Counted from the first letter of the stretch, positions 57,192 through 63,857 are shown. The stretch: 64,000 nt of DNA from Fonticula alba ATCC 38817 (GCA_000388065.2 KB932204.1), one strand, 5' to 3'. Numbers and translations are program-made. The notes: generated by a model from the letters alone, not told the origin.

Positions 57192-58833
57192 ATGGCCAAC
57201 ACACGCTTCGCCTACGTGCGGCACTTCGAGCAGGCGTCGGAGTACTTCCTTCCGCGGGACACCTGGCTGGTGATCCGCGTGGATGGCCGCGGCTTTTCGC
57301 GCTTCACCCAAGCTCACAATTATGTCAAGCCCAATGACGTGCGAGGGATCCAGCTGATGAATCGCGCGGCCATGCATGTGGCTCGGGAGTTCAACGAGTG
57401 CTGCGCCGCCTACGGACAGAGCGACGAGTACAGGTGCGATCTCGCCAGGGGGCGTGGAGGCGATTGTCCATGAGAATCCCCCCCCCTCCCCTCCCCCCGC
57501 CTCTCTCTCTCTCTCTCTCTCCTCGCATGGCTCCCGATGGCTGACCGTCGCGTCCATGCCCCCTCCCGCCTCCCGCACCCCCTGCCGGTCTGGGACGGGT
57601 CATGGCAATGGGCTCTTCAGCTTTGTCCTGCACAAATCGACGCAGCTTTACTCTCGGCGATTGTCGAAGATCGCTTCGTCAGTCAGCTCGGCCTTTTCGT
57701 CGGCCTTTGTCTTCCACTGGGCCGAGTACTTCCCCACCACCCCGCTGCAGTACCCACCGGCCTTCGACTCGCGTGTGGTTTCCTACCCCACTGTGCAGCA
57801 TGTTCGCGACTACTTCAGCTGGCGCCAAGCAGACTGTGCGTGTGTGGCGATATCCCCTTTGGAGGGTGGCGCTGGGCCTTGCCCCTGCCCTCTTCTCCCC
57901 GCCTCTCTTTCTGTGTCTGTCTTTCCATAGTGCCCGTGGTTGGCCATTCTAATGCCGACCCGTCCCCGTTGCCCCTTCCCTGCGGTGCTCGAGCAGGCCA
58001 CATCAACAACCTTTATAACACTTGCTTCTGGGCGCTGGTCCAGCAGGGCGGGATGACCCCACCCGAGGCGGAGGCCCGCCTGGATGTGCGTTCTCGCCTT
58101 TGCTTGCTTCATGTCCTCCCCCATCCGACATCACTTGCTGTTGCTCTTTTGCTCGCACCGCCCCGGCGGGGCTGAGACGTGCCTGCCGGGCGATGTCAAC
58201 AAGGTTTCTGACCCTTCCATCATGGGATCCACCCACATGTAGGGCACCTTCTCGAATGACAAGAATGAGCTCCTGTACTCGCAGTTTGGCATCAACTACA
58301 ATACCCTGTCGGCGGTTTTCCGGAAGGGAACCTTTTTGGCGAAGGAGGAGCCCGGTGCCTTCCCGGCGGATGCCTTCCTGCCGGGCGGCTGTACGGACTT
58401 GCTCCCCTGGCCGGCTAATGACCAATCGGTCGAGGGCTTCCCCGTGTCGCCATTGGCGGGGGCCGGGGCACTAGAGGCCAGCGTGGCCGGGCTATCGGTC
58501 TCCCCCTCTGAGCAGGAGGCAGGCGAGGTGACCGAGAAGGCGGACGATACGGCGGCCGCCATGTCGTCCTCCTCGACGTCGCATTTGAAGGGCCGGGCCT
58601 TGCGCCGGGCCCTGGCCAAGGAGGAGCGCAAGCAACGCAAGGCGGCCAACCTGCGAAAGGACTTCCATGCGCTGCACATTGACATCATTGGCGACAACTT
58701 TTGGGCGACCAGTGCCACCCCCGGGACCAAGCCCGGTCTGGGGGCGGTCCTCTTCGCTGAGCGTTCGGCCGACGCCCCTGCTCCTGGCACCCTGCGGCGG
58801 TCTCTCTCCCAGGAACTGGCCGACGTCCTGTGA
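57192..58833 (+). CDS. THG1: tRNA(His) guanylyltransferase
   Basis: Exons 57192-57433, 57621-57835, 57997-58085, 58243-58833. Motifs: [82 protein letters not shown] and [11 protein letters not shown]. Confidence 0.97.
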
Positions 58834-59246: not shown

Positions 59247-60009
59247 ATGCCGCCATCGACCATTGACGAGCCCAGGGCCTCGGCGTCGAGCCAGTCCCCG
59301 GCCGGGGGGAAACGCCCCAATCGGCGGCGTCCGAACAATCGCTCCGCATCCGGTCGCACGGAAACCCCACCGGAAGAGCTCTTTGCCGGGTTTGCCAGCC
59401 GGCGCACGGTTCGCCCCGCGCCTGCTCCAGCTGAGTCGGTGGACAGCCTCGCCGACCGGCTGGAGTCCACGGTGATTGCCGCGTCCACTGGGCCGAGTGG
59501 CATTTCCACAGATGGCGTGCCGGAGACCGTGAAGCCCCTGGCTTCTGCCACCGAGGAGGGGGAGCCTGTGGCGGCGGGCATCGCCACGGAGGCGGGTGAT
59601 CTGAAATCCGCCGGCGTGTCGACCGCCGTGGACATTCCGATGGGCGCCAGTGCCTCGGGCCCCCCCACTGCCTCGGGAGCCTCCGCTGAGTCAGGCTCGA
59701 CCAGTGCCCCGGCGCTGCGCAATGCTCGGACCGGACGCTCAGACCGGCCGGCTTTCTCGATGCATGTTGCCCGGCGAATGATCGAAAATGAATTGGAGAT
59801 CTCGATGGCGGTGTCGGACGAGCGCAAGGCCTTCGAGCGCGAACAGCTAGACCGTGCCCGTGGTACGTTTGAATTCTTGATGCTGCTATGTGTATGGGCC
59901 GCTCCGATTGACTGACTTCTTGAGAACCCCCTCACGACCAGAGGAGCGCCGGGTACGACGCGAGCAGGCTCGGCAGAGACGTCTTTCCGAGGAGGCGCCC
60001 GAGCAGTAG
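59247..60009 (+). CDS. Hypothetical low-complexity protein with C-terminal R3HCC1-like motif
   Basis: Exon 59247-59862 (GTACGT donor) and exon 59942-60009 join in phase 1. A disordered A/S/P/G-rich body is followed by DRPAFSMHVARRMIENELEI...EREQLDRAREERRVRREQ. Confidence 0.6.
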
Positions 60010-60253
60010 GAGAAAGCCCACCCGGCCGCGGATGTCTGTGCATCTGTGTGTGGGAGAGAGATGGCGGAGGGGACGGGGTTTTGTTCTCCGCCCGGCCATG
60101 ACACTCCTTTCCTGTCGGGGAAAGGGGTAGAATAAAAAAAGAGCGAGACTCGAGGTGGAGATGGAAAAAAAAAAAAAAAAGGCCAAAGAGTGTACAAGAG
60201 CGACAAAAGAAGAGGCGCACACAGTGGCCGTGGCTCGAAAAATGTGACGCCGG

Positions 60254-60264
60254 AAAAAAGAAAA
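60254..60264 (-). terminator. Pol III oligo-T terminator of tRNA-Phe
   Basis: The minus strand reads TTTTCTTTTTT starting 6 nt after the discriminator base. Confidence 0.75.
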
Positions 60265-60269
60265 GAGAG

Positions 60270-60342
60270 TGCCTCGAACCAGGATTGAACTGGTGACCTT
60301 GTGATCTTCAGTCACACGCTCTCCCAACTGAGCTATCGAGGC
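60270..60342 (-). tRNA. trnF-GAA: tRNA-Phe (anticodon GAA), intronless, 73 nt
   Basis: The reverse complement reads GCCTCGA TA GCTC AGTTGGGA GAGC G TGTGA CTGAAGA TCACA AGGTC ACCAG TTCAATC CTGGT TCGAGGC A. All four stems pair and the A and B boxes are present. There is no encoded CCA. Confidence 0.98.
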
Positions 60343-61369
60343 GGATGGTAGAATACCCACTTTTGGGAATATATGCGTTTTGTGGGCTCACCTCGGTACG
60401 GCTGCCCCCCCCCCCCCGTTCCTGGCTGGCCTCAGCTCCTTCGGTGTTGCCTTTCCGCCACAGCTCTGACCACAACCCCTGGCGAGGGAGGGAGGGAGCA
60501 GAGGAGGGTGCCTCTTTCCAGTCGCTCCGCTCGCCTCTCCGCGCACCTCCTCCTTCCTGGGCGCCTGCATTTGCGGAGGCTGTATCTTTCCCTTCCCCCC
60601 AAGACCCGAGCCCCTCCCAGAGGGGCCCGAATCTCGGGGACCAGTTCTGTGCTTCGATCGGGCCGGATGCCCTGCCCGATGATGCCCCCTCCCGGAAGGG
60701 TGAAACGCCGTCCCTGGCGCACTCTTCACAACGATGTGGTTCGCACGCTTTCCTGATTCGCCCTTTCCTGCTGTTGCCCTTTGCCCGCACGGCCCCCCCG
60801 GCCCCCGCCCCCCATCGAGATGGAACGCCCCGAGTGGCCCTCGAGGGCTTTCTCGGTGGTCCGGATCGCTTGCCCATTGGGCCGAGCGGCAACAGCGGCT
60901 GGCCGAGCTCCGGTTAGCAGAGAGCCCTATTCAGATCGCCGGTCTTTAGGGGGAACGATGCCAGGGACTCTCATGAAGCCCGAGCCCTGACGCGTATTCC
61001 GATGCCTGGGGGGAGCGTCTCGCGGCATGGTCTAAACACCTGCGGGCCACCTCCAAAGTGTTGGGACCCAGGCTCTGGATAGATCCAGAAGCCCTACTAC
61101 CAACGCATGGTACCAGCAATGGGCGTGCCGGAGCATGCCTCCCCTCCGAAATCGGGCGAGCGTGCGGGATCGGGAACCCCGGGCAATACGGTAGGCAGGG
61201 GGTAAAGCACACTGGTGGAAGAGGATTTCAAAAAGGCCCCTCCGGGTGTCTCCTGCGCATGAGACCAAGTATGCCCCCCTCCCCTTCCCCGCCGAATGCC
61301 CAACCTTCGCCTCTTCCCCCCTCTCGGACTCTCTCCCTTTCCTGCTGCTCCCTCTCTGTGACTGAAAGC

Positions 61370-62398
61370 ATGTTGTTCAGTCGGCATGGATTTCGATGCT
61401 GGCTGGGAGCCTCTTCGGCTTTGTCAGCCAAGCCCCGGGCTTTGCGGCCCATTTCCTCCCTGACAAGGCCCTGTCCGCTAACATCGACAGGCCTGCCTGC
61501 GAGTTTGCGTTCGCAGACCCACTTGCCGGGAGTCCAATTGTGCCTGGCCGTGGAGCAGGGCAAGAGCAAGCTGCCTGAGGGCATCAACCGGCCGGCCTCG
61601 TTGGGGCTTTTGCTTCGGATACTTGGGCTAAAGAATCAGGGCCTGCCATCGGAGCAAGCAGTCGGCCGTCTGATTGGCCGGGATAAGCAGACAGCCTCGC
61701 GGTTGATGGTCCAATATCTGGAACGCCACAGCATCTCGCCACCTTCGAAATTCCGACCCGTCGAGGAGCTTGAGGAGGACATCGTTTGGCTGGCTGGCTT
61801 GGACCCGCCGCCTTCGAAGGCCATGCTGAGCAAGCTGGTGAATGTCACCCCCTCGGTGATGATGACGTTGCTGGACAAGAAGATGCCGAACGCCGACCTG
61901 AGCTTCCGGCCCTGTCTCTGGCGACTGGATGAGCTGTGCACCGGCCTCGTAAGGCCATCGAATACCGACATGGCCCGGGAACTATCGGTGTCAGCCAACT
62001 CCATCTCGCTGGCCATGAGCAAATATGGATCCGGCATGAAGGCCCCTTCGGCACGCGTGTCGGAGCACCAGATTGAGCAGATTAAGGCGGCCTTTTCCTC
62101 GGAAGAGCCCCCCTCCGTCAGGGATTTGGCCATGAGTCTTGGCTTATCCAAAATGACCCTCTATCGGGAGTGCAAGAAGCTGAATCTGCCAACCAGGGGA
62201 CGGCTGCCGCCTCGCTCGCTTCTCGAAACTCTGGGCCGCTTGCACTTCGAGCAGGGCATCTCGAAGAAGGACGTTGCATTGCAGATGGAGTTACCCCAGT
62301 CCACGGTCAATCGCTATTTCCGGCTATACTTCACTCCAGACGGGCAGATCATCGAATCGGTAGCGGAGCCGCCGCCGACAGGCAAAGCCCAGCAATAG
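61370..62398 (+). CDS. Intronless 342-aa protein with predicted mitochondrial presequence and five tandem helix-turn-helix units
   Basis: Single ORF from the ATG at 61370. The first 61 residues have no D/E and contain 6 Arg and 1 Lys. Five S-x3-(A/L)-x2-(L/V/M)-x-(L/V/R)-(S/T/D/P)-x2-(T/S/V) HTH-like motifs start at aa 93, 148, 196, 248 and 297. Confidence 0.8.
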   Translation: MLFSRHGFRCWLGASSALSAKPRALRPISSLTRPCPLTSTGLPASLRSQTHLPGVQLCLAVEQGKSKLPEGINRPASLGLLLRILGLKNQGLPSEQAVGRLIGRDKQTASRLMVQYLERHSISPPSKFRPVEELEEDIVWLAGLDPPPSKAMLSKLVNVTPSVMMTLLDKKMPNADLSFRPCLWRLDELCTGLVRPSNTDMARELSVSANSISLAMSKYGSGMKAPSARVSEHQIEQIKAAFSSEEPPSVRDLAMSLGLSKMTLYRECKKLNLPTRGRLPPRSLLETLGRLHFEQGISKKDVALQMELPQSTVNRYFRLYFTPDGQIIESVAEPPPTGKAQQ

Positions 62399-62511
62399 CT
62401 CGGGCTCCTGTGGAATACACCAACTAGATGCCGAAAGGTCGTGTGCTTGTACAAAGGGGGGGGGCGGGGGGATTGCTCCACGTTGCCTGGATCCTACCCA
62501 AGAGTGGCATT

Positions 62512-62593
62512 CCCCCCCCCCCCCCCCCCCCCCCCCCCACCCGGCCCGTTTCCCCCCCTCCTTGGGGAAAAAACCCCGCACATGGCGCACCCG

Positions 62594-62672
<79 letters not shown>
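62512..62672. repeat. C27 and G78 homopolymer tracts
   Basis: C run 62512-62538 and G run 62595-62672, between the convergent ends of two genes. Confidence 0.9.
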
Positions 62673-62930: not shown

Positions 62931-63857
62931 TCATCGGAGGGCCAGGGCCATTGAGCCGGCGATGTCAAGGGCCCCGGTGATCAGGGCTAAAACCTGGGCC
63001 CGAGAGGTGGAGGTGACCTGAAGGTTGAAGGGAGCGGCGTTGAGGGCGGCACGGAGGCGATTGGCCAGGCGGCTCCAGGACTGGCTTGGAGTCTCGATGG
63101 GGGATTTGGATGGCTCCAGCGAAAGGCGCGGAGGGGTTTGACGATGCCGGACCGAGCGCCGGGTGTCGAGATGATCCGAGGCCATCAATGATGGAGGGGT
63201 CGGGATCATGGCCGACATGGGGAAAAAGTAGAGGAGACAAAAGAGATTGTACCAATCGGCTTCGGAAAAGTGCTTGGGATGCAGGTTGCTTGGGGGGCCG
63301 GGAGGATCCCGGGGCGGTGGGCCGAGAAGCGGCCCCTGGGCATCGGATGAGGTGAAAAGGCTGCTGAAGGACTCGAGGTAGGGCGAGGCAAAGGAGGGGC
63401 CCTTGACTGGGGCAGGTGCCGGGGCGGTGGCCGGGGGGACGGACGATTCGATGAAGGGCTGGATGATGCACTTGCAAGCGATCGAAATGAGCGTTTGGAT
63501 GGAAACCACCGCCGGCATTCGGGAAAACGCCGTCAGGCCAAGGAGCTCCGGGGAAGACAGGCGATATTCCGGGCGATTGGGAGCCGGACGCCCTGACAGG
63601 AGCTCATCTTGCGCGTATAGCTGGTTGAAAATGATCAGGCTTTTGAAGCATTCATCCGGGTCGGGTGCCAGGCTGACCAGGAGCAGGAGGAGGCCTCGTG
63701 TGGCGAAGCAGTTTGGCAAATGGGCAACAGGAGTCGCTGAGGTGGTGATCGGAGCAACATGAGCGCCTGTCAGGATCTCAAGCAGACCAATGCACAGGCG
63801 CCCGTAAAATTGCCGCAGAGAGGCGCGAACGTCAGGTGTGGTGCGCCGGTCTCGATG
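62931..63857 (-). CDS. 3' terminal exon of a hypothetical protein (gene continues upstream, beyond or near the window end)
   Basis: Pyrimidine tract and CCCCAG acceptor at 63858, then an open frame HRDRRTTPDVRASLRQFYGRLCIGLLEIL...FSEADWYNLFCLLYFFP...GSMALALR* to 62931. (CA)n intron sequence lies upstream. No family recognised. Confidence 0.6.
   Translation of the reverse strand, partial: HRDRRTTPDVRASLRQFYGRLCIGLLEILTGAHVAPITTSATPVAHLPNCFATRGLLLLLVSLAPDPDECFKSLIIFNQLYAQDELLSGRPAPNRPEYRLSSPELLGLTAFSRMPAVVSIQTLISIACKCIIQPFIESSVPPATAPAPAPVKGPSFASPYLESFSSLFTSSDAQGPLLGPPPRDPPGPPSNLHPKHFSEADWYNLFCLLYFFPMSAMIPTPPSLMASDHLDTRRSVRHRQTPPRLSLEPSKSPIETPSQSWSRLANRLRAALNAAPFNLQVTSTSRAQVLALITGALDIAGSMALALR

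What the first reader, a model, noticed from the sequence alone, without database searches (positions are those of the whole stretch)
61370..62398. Intronless, apparently mitochondrion-targeted protein built from five tandem prokaryote-style HTH units
Seen in sequence: after about 60 aa of Arg/Ser/Leu/Ala-rich, acid-free sequence, the protein repeats a three-helix unit every 48-55 aa. The HTH cores are PSEQAVGRLIGRDKQTASRLM (aa93), PSKAMLSKLVNVTPSVMMTLL (148), PSNTDMARELSVSANSISLAM (196), PSVRDLAMSLGLSKMTLYREC (248) and ISKKDVALQMELPQSTVNRYF (297). Each is preceded by an amphipathic helix, three of them starting RP. No catalytic (DDE, nuclease) domain is visible, and every other complete gene called in the window has introns. 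Established: this pattern is the classical HTH of sigma-70 region 4, Fis/TetR-like regulators and IS/Tc transposase DNA-binding domains, and such N-termini are typical mitochondrial presequences. Inference: a modular tandem-HTH organellar nucleic-acid-binding protein (nucleoid, transcription or RNA-processing factor, by analogy to PPR/mTERF repeat proteins). It may derive from a bacterial gene or a domesticated transposase N-terminus. I recognise no described family with this architecture.
Basis: partly seen in the sequence, partly recalled or inferred. Interest (0 to 1): 0.8.

Follow-up and report, generated by a model that had tools for sequence, protein, structure and literature searches.

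The report
Short, divergent Fonticula tandem-HTH array protein
This expressed, intron-free gene of the amoeba Fonticula alba encodes five DNA-gripping helix-turn-helix modules in a row; it is the shortest and most divergent member of a family of at least 15 such genes found only in this species, and its proposed delivery to mitochondria is still a guess.

Summary
Window 61370-62398 (+) is an intact 342-codon ORF. RNA contigs from two samples cover it without a splice, while the intergenic DNA upstream is silent and the upstream neighbour is spliced.

Units 4 and 5 are classical HTH by Pfam and by fold. Unit 3 is marginal. Units 1 and 2 are tied in only by profile-profile matches and by the model.

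It is not an orphan. It aligns collinearly with the first five units of at least 14 Fonticula alba "hypothetical proteins" that carry 8-9 units. This undescribed, so far species-restricted family was already flagged by this scan on other DNA. This copy lacks the family's conserved C-terminal half and sits on the longest branch.

Outside Fonticula, the only relatives are multi-HTH arrays from metagenomes, some fused to LAGLIDADG or HNH homing nucleases. I found no transposase domain and no flanking repeats.

Mitochondrial targeting is plausible, because the leader is acid-free and Arg-rich like those of its paralogs. It is untested, and the mRNA also carries two in-frame upstream ATGs. The most likely role is a modular sequence-specific DNA binder.

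The parts
61226..62436 (+). Minimum extent of the unspliced mRNA
   Evidence: RNA contigs of four runs (two samples) span 61226/61253/61447/61485 to 62345/62434/62436, are 100% identical and show no joint. The stretch 60150-61225 has zero depth.
61259..61369 (+). In-frame upstream extension of 37 codons (ATGs at 61259 and 61271), used by the public 379-aa gene model
   Evidence: P0001 is 379 aa and its residues 38-379 equal the 342-aa ORF. Both ATGs lie inside the RNA contigs. This stretch is Pro/Ser-rich, and none of the paralog N-termini compared shows a counterpart to it.
61370..62398 (+).
   Evidence: Translation. GC by codon position is 0.57/0.47/0.73. It aligns collinearly with the paralogs.
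61370..61525 (+). Leader, aa 1-52: no acidic residue, 7 Arg/Lys, predicted disordered; candidate mitochondrial presequence
   Evidence: Composition. pLDDT is below 50 for residues 1-38. The 'MLF..R..F.C' start resembles that of paralog P0006.
61526..61585 (+). N-terminal cap helix and 'LP' loop (aa 53-72), the family's most conserved block
   Evidence: The motif G-x-x-L-x-x-x-[IV]-x-x-G-x-x-x-[LM]-P is present in all 15 members. This block has the lowest column entropy in the family alignment. The model shows helix 53-62.
61586..61744 (+). HTH-like unit 1 (aa 73-125)
   Evidence: Helices 75-85, 95-102 and 106-116 with pLDDT about 95. It carries the invariant family motif GRLxGxD. hhalign U1-U2 gives 91%. 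No Pfam hit.
61745..61897 (+). HTH-like unit 2 (aa 126-176)
   Evidence: Helices 131-142, 150-157 and 161-171. It carries the invariant DPP turn. hhalign U2-U3 gives 85%. No Pfam hit.
61898..62047 (+). HTH unit 3 (aa 177-226)
   Evidence: Helices 183-191, 198-204 and 209-219. NUMOD1 is marginal. It scores 7.3 bits against a unit HMM built from non-Fonticula arrays. PHROG 664 covers aa 197-275 at 3e-7.
62048..62197 (+). HTH unit 4 (aa 227-276)
   Evidence: Pfam hits to HTH_AraC, HTH_11, HTH_7 and HTH_38. Structural matches over aa 223-276 to the GcrA DNA-binding domain (Z 7.2, rmsd 2.0), the Tc3 HTH (Z 7.0), homeodomains and Myb repeats. It scores 21.4 bits against the outside unit HMM.
62198..62344 (+). 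HTH unit 5 (aa 277-325)
   Evidence: Pfam HTH_3 at 2e-4 and HTH_7 at 4e-3. Structural matches to SorC/DeoR N-terminal HTH domains, sigma region 4 and DosR (Z 5.4-5.9). It scores 21.5 bits against the outside unit HMM.
62345..62398 (+). Short, low-confidence tail (aa 326-342) and stop codon; the family's C-terminal half is absent
   Evidence: Block-mean pLDDT falls to 48 (aa 331-340) and 38 (aa 341-342), and residues 335-342 are below 50. The paralogs continue for about 300 more residues, including the invariant PEYFFLA block. tblastn finds no trace of that half anywhere in the window.

Best explanation
The gene encodes a small, basic protein (pI about 9.5). It has a flexible, acid-free leader, one capping helix and five consecutive three-helix HTH modules joined by short Pro-rich linkers. 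It has no enzymatic domain.

It is the shortest and most diverged paralog of a Fonticula alba-specific family of intronless genes for tandem-HTH arrays, whose other members mostly carry 8-9 modules.

By inference from the fold, each module would put its third helix into a DNA major groove, so that the array reads an extended site of roughly 20-30 bp. The recognition helices differ most between paralogs, so each paralog would read a different sequence.

The leader would direct the protein, and most of its paralogs, into mitochondria, where it would act on mitochondrial DNA as a nucleoid, promoter, terminator or origin factor.

Shown: the ORF, its expression, the lack of introns, family membership, the five-unit architecture and the HTH fold of units 4-5. 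Inferred: DNA rather than RNA as the ligand, modular reading of the site, and mitochondrial location.
For: Expression without introns.

Family membership:
- phmmer against 1.84 billion representatives gives collinear hits only to Fonticula proteins, E 3e-16 to 1e-5.
- BLASTP aligns aa 54-321 of this protein with aa 92-370 of H696_06061.
- 22 columns are invariant across 15 members.
- A profile search returned only Fonticula proteins, four of them (P0032-P0035) not seen before.
- A JGI metagenome scan with the family's two most conserved peptide patterns confirmed no relative.

Architecture: the AF2 model and the unit-to-unit profile matches.

HTH identity of units 3-5. In one search the protein scores 56.8 bits against an outside unit HMM, while the best of 500 shuffles scores 3.5.

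Diversification: recognition helices of units 2-4 have the highest column entropy, and the cap and linkers have the lowest.

Leader:
- There is no D/E in the first 61 aa.
- 11 of 15 family members have no D/E in their first 30 residues and a twelfth has its first one at residue 30, although the leaders themselves do not align.
- Six paralogs carry an R-[AG]-[FL]-S-S motif of the kind cut by the mitochondrial processing peptidase. That interpretation of the motif rests on general knowledge of presequences.

Paralog genes P0013 and P0006 are also intronless.
Against: - No localisation predictor or experiment was available.
- The leader has only moderate amphipathicity (maximum helical moment 0.51, in a stretch that contains prolines), and it lacks the R-x-F-S-S motif of its paralogs.
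- The mRNA includes in-frame ATGs at 61259 and 61271, so the main product may begin with a Pro/Ser-rich extension.
- Arg/Ala/Ser/Pro-rich disordered ends may simply reflect this GC-rich genome.
- Units 1 and 2 have no sequence-level HTH signal, and unit 2 is net acidic, so they may be structural rather than DNA-reading.
- The copy lacks the family's conserved C-terminal half and sits on a very long branch with atypical composition, which could mean relaxed constraint.
- No DNA target is known.
Confidence: 0.55

Rival explanations
1. It is a nuclear DNA-binding protein: a lineage-specific transcription factor, or a repeat- or transposon-binding factor descended from the DNA-binding end of a transposase or homing endonuclease. 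The acid-free N-terminus would be just a disordered region.
For: Structural neighbours of units 4-5 include the Tc3 transposase bipartite domain, homeodomains, Myb repeats and Reb1. AFDB neighbours include arrays named 'Mos1 transposase HTH domain'. The annotated start at 61259 gives a non-presequence-like N-terminus, and that ATG is in the mRNA. The family has many divergent copies, as expected for fast-evolving nuclear DNA-binding families.
Against: I saw no classical nuclear localisation signal in the sequence. The acid-free, Arg-rich composition of the first 30 or so residues recurs in about 12 of 15 paralogs even though those residues do not align. Six paralogs carry an R-x-F/L-S-S motif. 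There is no DDE or nuclease domain and there are no terminal repeats around the gene.
Confidence: 0.25
2. It is an organellar RNA-binding repeat protein that acts like PPR, OPR or mTERF factors on mitochondrial transcripts rather than on DNA.
For: The pattern fits nuclear-encoded organellar RNA factors: a lineage-specific expansion, repeat architecture, variable putative recognition surfaces and presequence-like leaders. Some winged-helix and HTH arrays do bind RNA, for example the SelB C-terminal domains, which appear among weak structural matches.
Against: Every Pfam and PHROG hit at whole-protein E <= 1e-4, and all but three of the structural matches with Z of at least 5, are double-stranded-DNA-binding HTH domains. 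The units are 48-55-aa three-helix bundles, not 30-38-aa helical hairpins. No PPR, mTERF or OPR model is hit.
Confidence: 0.1
3. It is a truncated, decaying paralog that is still transcribed but has no function of its own.
For: It lacks the conserved C-terminal half present in the full-length members. It has the longest branch in the family tree (about 4.4 substitutions per site) and atypical composition. It departs from otherwise near-invariant family residues, for example GFD to GIN and RDPP to LDPP. Long ORFs are less informative in a genome with 60% GC or more.
Against: The ORF is intact over 342 codons and shows coding-type GC periodicity. The predicted fold is confident, with pLDDT of at least 85 over most of aa 45-325. 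Units 4-5 match canonical HTH profiles better than the same units of the paralogs do; this comparison is partly circular, because the outside arrays were found with this protein. Transcript depth is similar to the neighbouring gene's. Other short members exist, of 252 and 418 aa.
Confidence: 0.1

Closest known systems
Fonticula alba tandem-HTH 'hypothetical proteins' (H696_06061, 05449, 05858, 04187, 04689, 05870, 05857, 06059, 02523, 05305, 04677, 06163, 06112, 06348)
   Same: They share the N-terminal cap motif, the GRLxGxD and DPP signatures and the order of units 1-5. They also share acid-free leaders and intronless genes. All of these were tested here.
   Different: This copy is only 24-29% identical to them. 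It stops after unit 5, so it lacks the conserved C-terminal half with the PEYFFLA block. It lacks the R-x-F-S-S leader motif, has a different amino-acid make-up and lies alone on a 3.07-Mb scaffold.
Multi-HTH arrays recovered from metagenomic and other unnamed environmental sequences (taxon not given by the sources), some fused to LAGLIDADG or HNH homing-endonuclease domains (e.g. P0019, P0018, P0029, P0008; PHROG 664)
   Same: They contain repeated 45-50-aa three-helix HTH units of the HTH_7, HTH_23 or HTH_38 type in long tandem arrays. Units 3-5 of this protein match them at E 4e-9 to 1e-3 in a library of 1.84 billion proteins.
   Different: Their units are near-identical copies within one protein, whereas here the units have diverged so far that units 1-2 are not recognised. 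Here there is no nuclease domain, the gene is eukaryotic, nuclear and expressed, and there is an N-terminal leader and cap helix. Whether the two share ancestry or merely converged on HTH sequence features cannot be decided from these scores.
Bipartite or multiple HTH DNA-binding domains of eukaryotes (Tc3/mariner and paired domains, the DUX4 double homeodomain, R2R3 Myb, Reb1)
   Same: They have the same three-helix fold per unit, with two or more units on a flexible linker reading adjacent DNA sites. Units 4-5 superpose on 1u78, 5z6z and 6kks over 87-91 residues.
   Different: No Pfam model of these families reaches its cut-off. This protein has five units rather than two or three, and there is no DDE transposase domain.
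PPR, OPR and mTERF organellar helical-repeat proteins (resemblance in proposed role only)
   Same: They are nuclear-encoded, lineage-expanded repeat proteins with targeting leaders and variable recognition surfaces. This resemblance is inferred, not tested.
   Different: The fold and unit length differ: these have helical hairpins of 30-38 aa, against three-helix bundles of 48-55 aa here. There is no sequence match, and most of those proteins bind RNA, mTERF proteins being the partial exception.

Membership tests
Fonticula alba tandem-HTH array family (undescribed) | Collinear alignment over several units, with the N-cap motif G-x-x-L-x-x-x-[IV]-x-x-G-x-x-x-[LM]-P and the GRLxGxD and DPP signatures | tested here: met
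   The motif starts at aa 54, and 22 columns are invariant across 15 members.
Fonticula alba tandem-HTH array family (undescribed) | Conserved C-terminal half (units 6-9, including the invariant PEYFFLA block) | tested here: not met
   The protein ends after unit 5. No trace of that half is found elsewhere in the window. Two other members (252 and 418 aa) are also short.
Fonticula alba tandem-HTH array family (undescribed) | Intronless gene with an acid-free, Arg-rich N-terminal leader | tested here: met
   RNA contigs are unspliced. The leader has 0 D/E and 7 R/K in 53 aa. This holds only if translation starts at 61370.
Pfam HTH_7 (resolvase-type HTH) / simple tri-helical HTH | Score above the curated cut-off, and a three-helix fold | tested here: met
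   HTH_7 scores 26.7 bits against a cut-off of 23.8, and HTH_3 scores 24.5 against 23. Units 4 and 5 superpose on HTH domains at rmsd 1.7-2.2 A.
Serine recombinase / resolvase | N-terminal catalytic resolvase domain | tested here: not met
   No such Pfam hit. The model contains only HTH units.
DDE transposases (Tc1/mariner, IS30, IS630) or an active transposon | DDE catalytic domain and terminal inverted repeats | tested here: not met
   No catalytic domain. No flanking inverted or direct repeats apart from homopolymer runs. There is a single copy in the window.
Homing endonucleases with NUMOD1 or HTH arrays | A LAGLIDADG, HNH or GIY-YIG nuclease domain, and NUMOD1 above its cut-off | tested here: not met
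   NUMOD1 scores 17.2 bits against a cut-off of 22.8. There is no nuclease domain. Only the outside hits carry LAGLIDADG or HNH domains.
PPR, mTERF or OPR organellar repeat proteins | Helical-hairpin repeats of 30-38 aa that match the family models | tested here: not met
   No hit at E up to 10. The units are three-helix and 48-55 aa long.
Mitochondrial matrix-targeted precursor | A cleavable amphipathic presequence recognised by predictors, or shown by localisation | not testable with these tools
   Only composition and a simple helical-moment calculation were possible. The start codon is ambiguous.

The most novel reading that the evidence does not exclude
The Fonticula tandem-HTH family is a new class of nuclear-encoded, mitochondrion-imported modular DNA readers, a DNA-level counterpart of PPR proteins. 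Each paralog would recognise a different element of the mitochondrial genome. Candidate targets are the short repeats that another note of this scan reports at the borders of strand-skew blocks (s1-065382, not tested here). The family may descend from the DNA-binding arrays of organellar or phage homing endonucleases. This gene would be its minimal five-module version.
Probability: 0.25. Interest if true: 0.8.

Novelty: new variant of a known kind. Interest (0 to 1): 0.5.

Why it matters
Tandem HTH arrays turn up widely among uncharacterised, mostly bacterial and phage-like, predicted proteins. They have hardly been studied as modular DNA readers.

A eukaryotic family that is expressed, intronless, confined to one lineage and possibly sent to mitochondria would add a new type of organellar gene-expression or genome-maintenance factor. 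It would also offer a natural series of 5- to 9-module proteins for working out how HTH modules are strung together to read long sites.

This particular gene is the smallest member, and its last two modules are the most canonical. That makes it the easiest one to express, localise and test for binding. For the scan itself, it adds one more, outlying member to a family already flagged on other DNA of this genome.

Tried and rejected
- The word-indexed protein search with the 342-aa query found only the protein itself. The exhaustive HMMER search was needed to find relatives.
- The PDB sequence search found nothing.
- Single-sequence AlphaFold gave a poor model (pLDDT 48), and the Foldseek search on that model was meaningless.
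- Whole-chain Foldseek of the good model against the PDB gave no significant hit (best E 0.14). This is as expected for units on flexible linkers. Only single units or unit pairs match.
- The Swiss-Prot AFDB search gave only uncharacterised Listeria proteins and weak sigma and TFIIB matches.
- Plain pairwise unit alignments do not show the repeat for units 1-3.
- The generic R-x-[FYL]-[SA] motif is not enriched in family leaders over bodies (0.78 against 0.63 per 100 aa). Only the specific R-[AG]-[FL]-S-S form recurs, and only within one sub-clade, so it is not independent evidence and it is absent from this protein.
- The tree could not place this protein within the family, because of its long branch and open forks.
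- The first metagenome scan failed because no stretch of the alignment was conserved enough. The second, with eight closer members, confirmed no relative.
- Five paper searches found no description of the family.
- A signal-peptide reading of the N-terminus was considered and rejected. By my own estimate the hydrophobic core (aa 10-20) is weak, with a Kyte-Doolittle mean of about 1.1, and a secreted HTH array makes little sense.
- A transposon reading was rejected: there is no catalytic domain and there are no terminal repeats.

Full report
**The ORF and its expression**

Window 61370-62398 (+) translates without interruption into 342 residues. The same frame stays open upstream to 61058.

The CDS shows coding-type periodicity, with GC at codon positions 1, 2 and 3 of 0.57, 0.47 and 0.73.

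RNA contigs from four runs of 2012 (two samples) cover 61226/61253 to 62434/62436. They contain no differing letter and no joint. The 1.07 kb upstream (60150-61225) has zero depth, and the upstream gene in the same libraries carries a GT..AG intron at 59862-59940. The libraries are therefore real RNA, and the gene is expressed and intronless.

The mRNA contains two in-frame ATGs upstream of 61370, at 61259 and 61271. The true N-terminus is therefore open. Two points favour 61370: none of the paralog N-termini compared shows a counterpart to the 37-codon extension, and the 'MLF..R..F.C' start resembles that of paralog P0006.

**The repeat architecture**

By sequence alone the repeat is only partly visible.
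- Pfam gives HTH_7 (26.7 bits, cut-off 23.8), HTH_3 and many sub-threshold HTH families, all in aa 190-330.
- Scanned unit by unit, units 4 and 5 hit HTH models, unit 3 is marginal (NUMOD1), and units 1 and 2 hit nothing.
- Simple pairwise alignments single out only U4-U5 and U3-U4.

Once the family alignment is used, the picture is clear.
- Unit profiles match each other in register: U1-U2 91%, U2-U3 85%, U3-U5 84% and U4-U5 92% probability.
- An AlphaFold2 model built on 15 sequences reaches mean pLDDT 81.5. It shows a disordered 1-38, a cap helix at 53-62 and five helix triplets at 75-116, 131-171, 183-219, 232-270 and 282-320. The single-sequence model had failed.
- Units 4 and 5 superpose on solved tri-helical DNA-binding domains at rmsd 1.7-2.2 A over 43-48 residues. 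These include the GcrA DNA-binding domain (Z 7.2), the Tc3 transposase HTH (Z 7.0), homeodomains, Myb repeats and the Tn3 resolvase HTH. The pair of units matches bipartite domains such as Tc3, DUX4 and R2R3 Myb.
- These Z values are below the tool's caution line. They are nevertheless about what a 45-residue domain can reach, and they agree with the Pfam result.
- No whole-chain match exists in the PDB.

**Family membership**

The protein is not an orphan. An exhaustive phmmer search of 1.84 billion representatives returned 29 relatives. Ten of them align collinearly with aa 18-334 at E 3e-16 to 1e-5. All ten are Fonticula alba 'hypothetical proteins' of 252-795 aa.

BLASTP aligns aa 54-321 of this protein with aa 92-370 of H696_06061. 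In the multiple alignment, the cap motif, GRLxGxD, the DPP turn and 22 columns in all are invariant across 15 members.

A profile search returned only Fonticula proteins, four of them (P0032-P0035) not seen before. A scan of JGI metagenome contigs with the two most conserved family peptides confirmed no relative. AFDB fold clusters rank three Fonticula paralogs first, at E 1e-11 to 1e-9.

The family genes examined are intronless, and two of them lie in tandem.

Earlier notes of this scan had already described this family on other pieces of the genome (s1-065373, s1-065392). I used that as a lead and re-derived it independently.

**How this copy differs from its paralogs**

- It stops after unit 5 and lacks the roughly 300-residue C-terminal half, including the invariant PEYFFLA block.
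- It is 24-29% identical to the other members.
- It has by far the longest branch, about 4.4 substitutions per site, and a deviant composition.
- It is a single copy in the window and has no flanking terminal repeats.

**Relatives outside Fonticula**

The remaining 19 hits are metagenomic proteins made of many near-identical HTH units.
- One carries a LAGLIDADG_2 domain (E 3e-30).
- Three end in what by eye are HNH motifs (sequences).
- One source names its protein a sigma subunit.

These proteins match only units 3-5 of this protein.

A 46-position unit HMM built from 104 units of these outside arrays, with no Fonticula sequence in it, scores this protein at 56.8 bits, against a maximum of 3.5 for 500 shuffles. 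The contributions are 7.3, 21.4 and 21.5 bits from units 3, 4 and 5. Units 1-2 are not recognised, and the paralogs score 24 bits or less. That last contrast is partly circular, because the outside arrays were found with this protein.

PHROG 664 ('DNA binding protein', 3e-7), the ESM Atlas searches by shape and by sequence features, and the AFDB fold clusters all point to the same kind of phage and bacterial multi-HTH arrays.

The module type is therefore the common simple HTH of resolvases, transposases and homing-endonuclease DNA-binding arrays. Descent from such an array is possible but not shown.

**Likely mechanism**

Within the family, the cap helix, the following loop, the first helix of unit 1 and the DPP turn are the most conserved parts. 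The third (recognition) helices of units 2-4 are the most variable. This pattern fits a fixed scaffold with diversified reading surfaces.

The mature part of the protein is basic (pI about 9.3), although unit 2 is net acidic.

I infer a modular, sequence-specific double-stranded-DNA binder that reads an extended site. RNA binding is a weaker alternative.

**Mitochondrial targeting**

The first 61 residues have no acidic residue and a net charge of +7, against 10.4% D+E in the rest of the protein. The region is predicted to be disordered.

In the family, 11 of 15 members have no acidic residue in their first 30 residues and a twelfth has its first one at residue 30, even though these leaders do not align. 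Six paralogs carry an R-[AG]-[FL]-S-S motif of the type cleaved by the mitochondrial processing peptidase. Composition kept without sequence conservation is typical of targeting peptides; this is established knowledge, not tested here.

Against this:
- The leader's helical moment is modest.
- This protein lacks the cleavage-type motif.
- The upstream ATGs may add a Pro-rich extension.
- The genome's GC bias favours Arg/Ala/Pro-rich tails.
- No predictor or experiment was available.

I put mitochondrial location at roughly 45%.

Another note of this scan reports short repeats at the borders of strand-skew blocks in Fonticula mitochondrial DNA (s1-065382). Those would be natural candidate targets, but I could not test this.

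**Verdict**

The object is a new, outlying and truncated member of an undescribed, species-restricted family of tandem-HTH arrays that this scan had met before on other DNA. Its architecture is a eukaryotic variant of a known but little-studied kind. Its cellular location and its ligand remain to be shown.

Noticed in passing
window 62512-62672: A C27 run (62512-62538) and a G78 run (62595-62672) lie about 115-275 nt downstream of the stop codon and could pair as a long hairpin. The RNA contigs end just before them, at 62434-62436. G or C homopolymer runs of 12-27 nt occur about 40 times across the window, so this looks like a genome-wide habit, but the 78-nt run is by far the longest. It could also be an assembly artefact.
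   Followed up: partly
window 59247-60149 (+): The upstream neighbour on the same strand is expressed and spliced, with a GT..AG intron at 59862-59940. Its first exon has no Pfam match. The RNA ends at 60148/60149, just before an A16 run at 60165-60180.
   Followed up: partly
window 57537-58172 (+): This ORF matches the C-terminal domain of tRNA-His guanylyltransferase (Thg1C, E 9e-11).
   Followed up: no
P0019, P0018, P0029, P0008 (metagenomic proteins, not in the window): These are long arrays of near-identical HTH units fused to LAGLIDADG_2 (P0019, Pfam E 3e-30) or, by eye, to HNH motifs (P0018, P0029, P0008). They look like homing-endonuclease-like proteins whose target-site reader is a 4-14-unit HTH array.
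   Followed up: partly
L001 8001-12697 (Fonticula scaffold KB932214.1): Two family members, H696_05857 (686 aa) and H696_05858 (516 aa, partial), lie in tandem on the same strand, and both are intronless.
   Followed up: no
window 62931-63719 (-): A 262-aa ORF on the opposite strand downstream has no Pfam match. The region has strong positive GC skew, 0.3-0.4.
   Followed up: no
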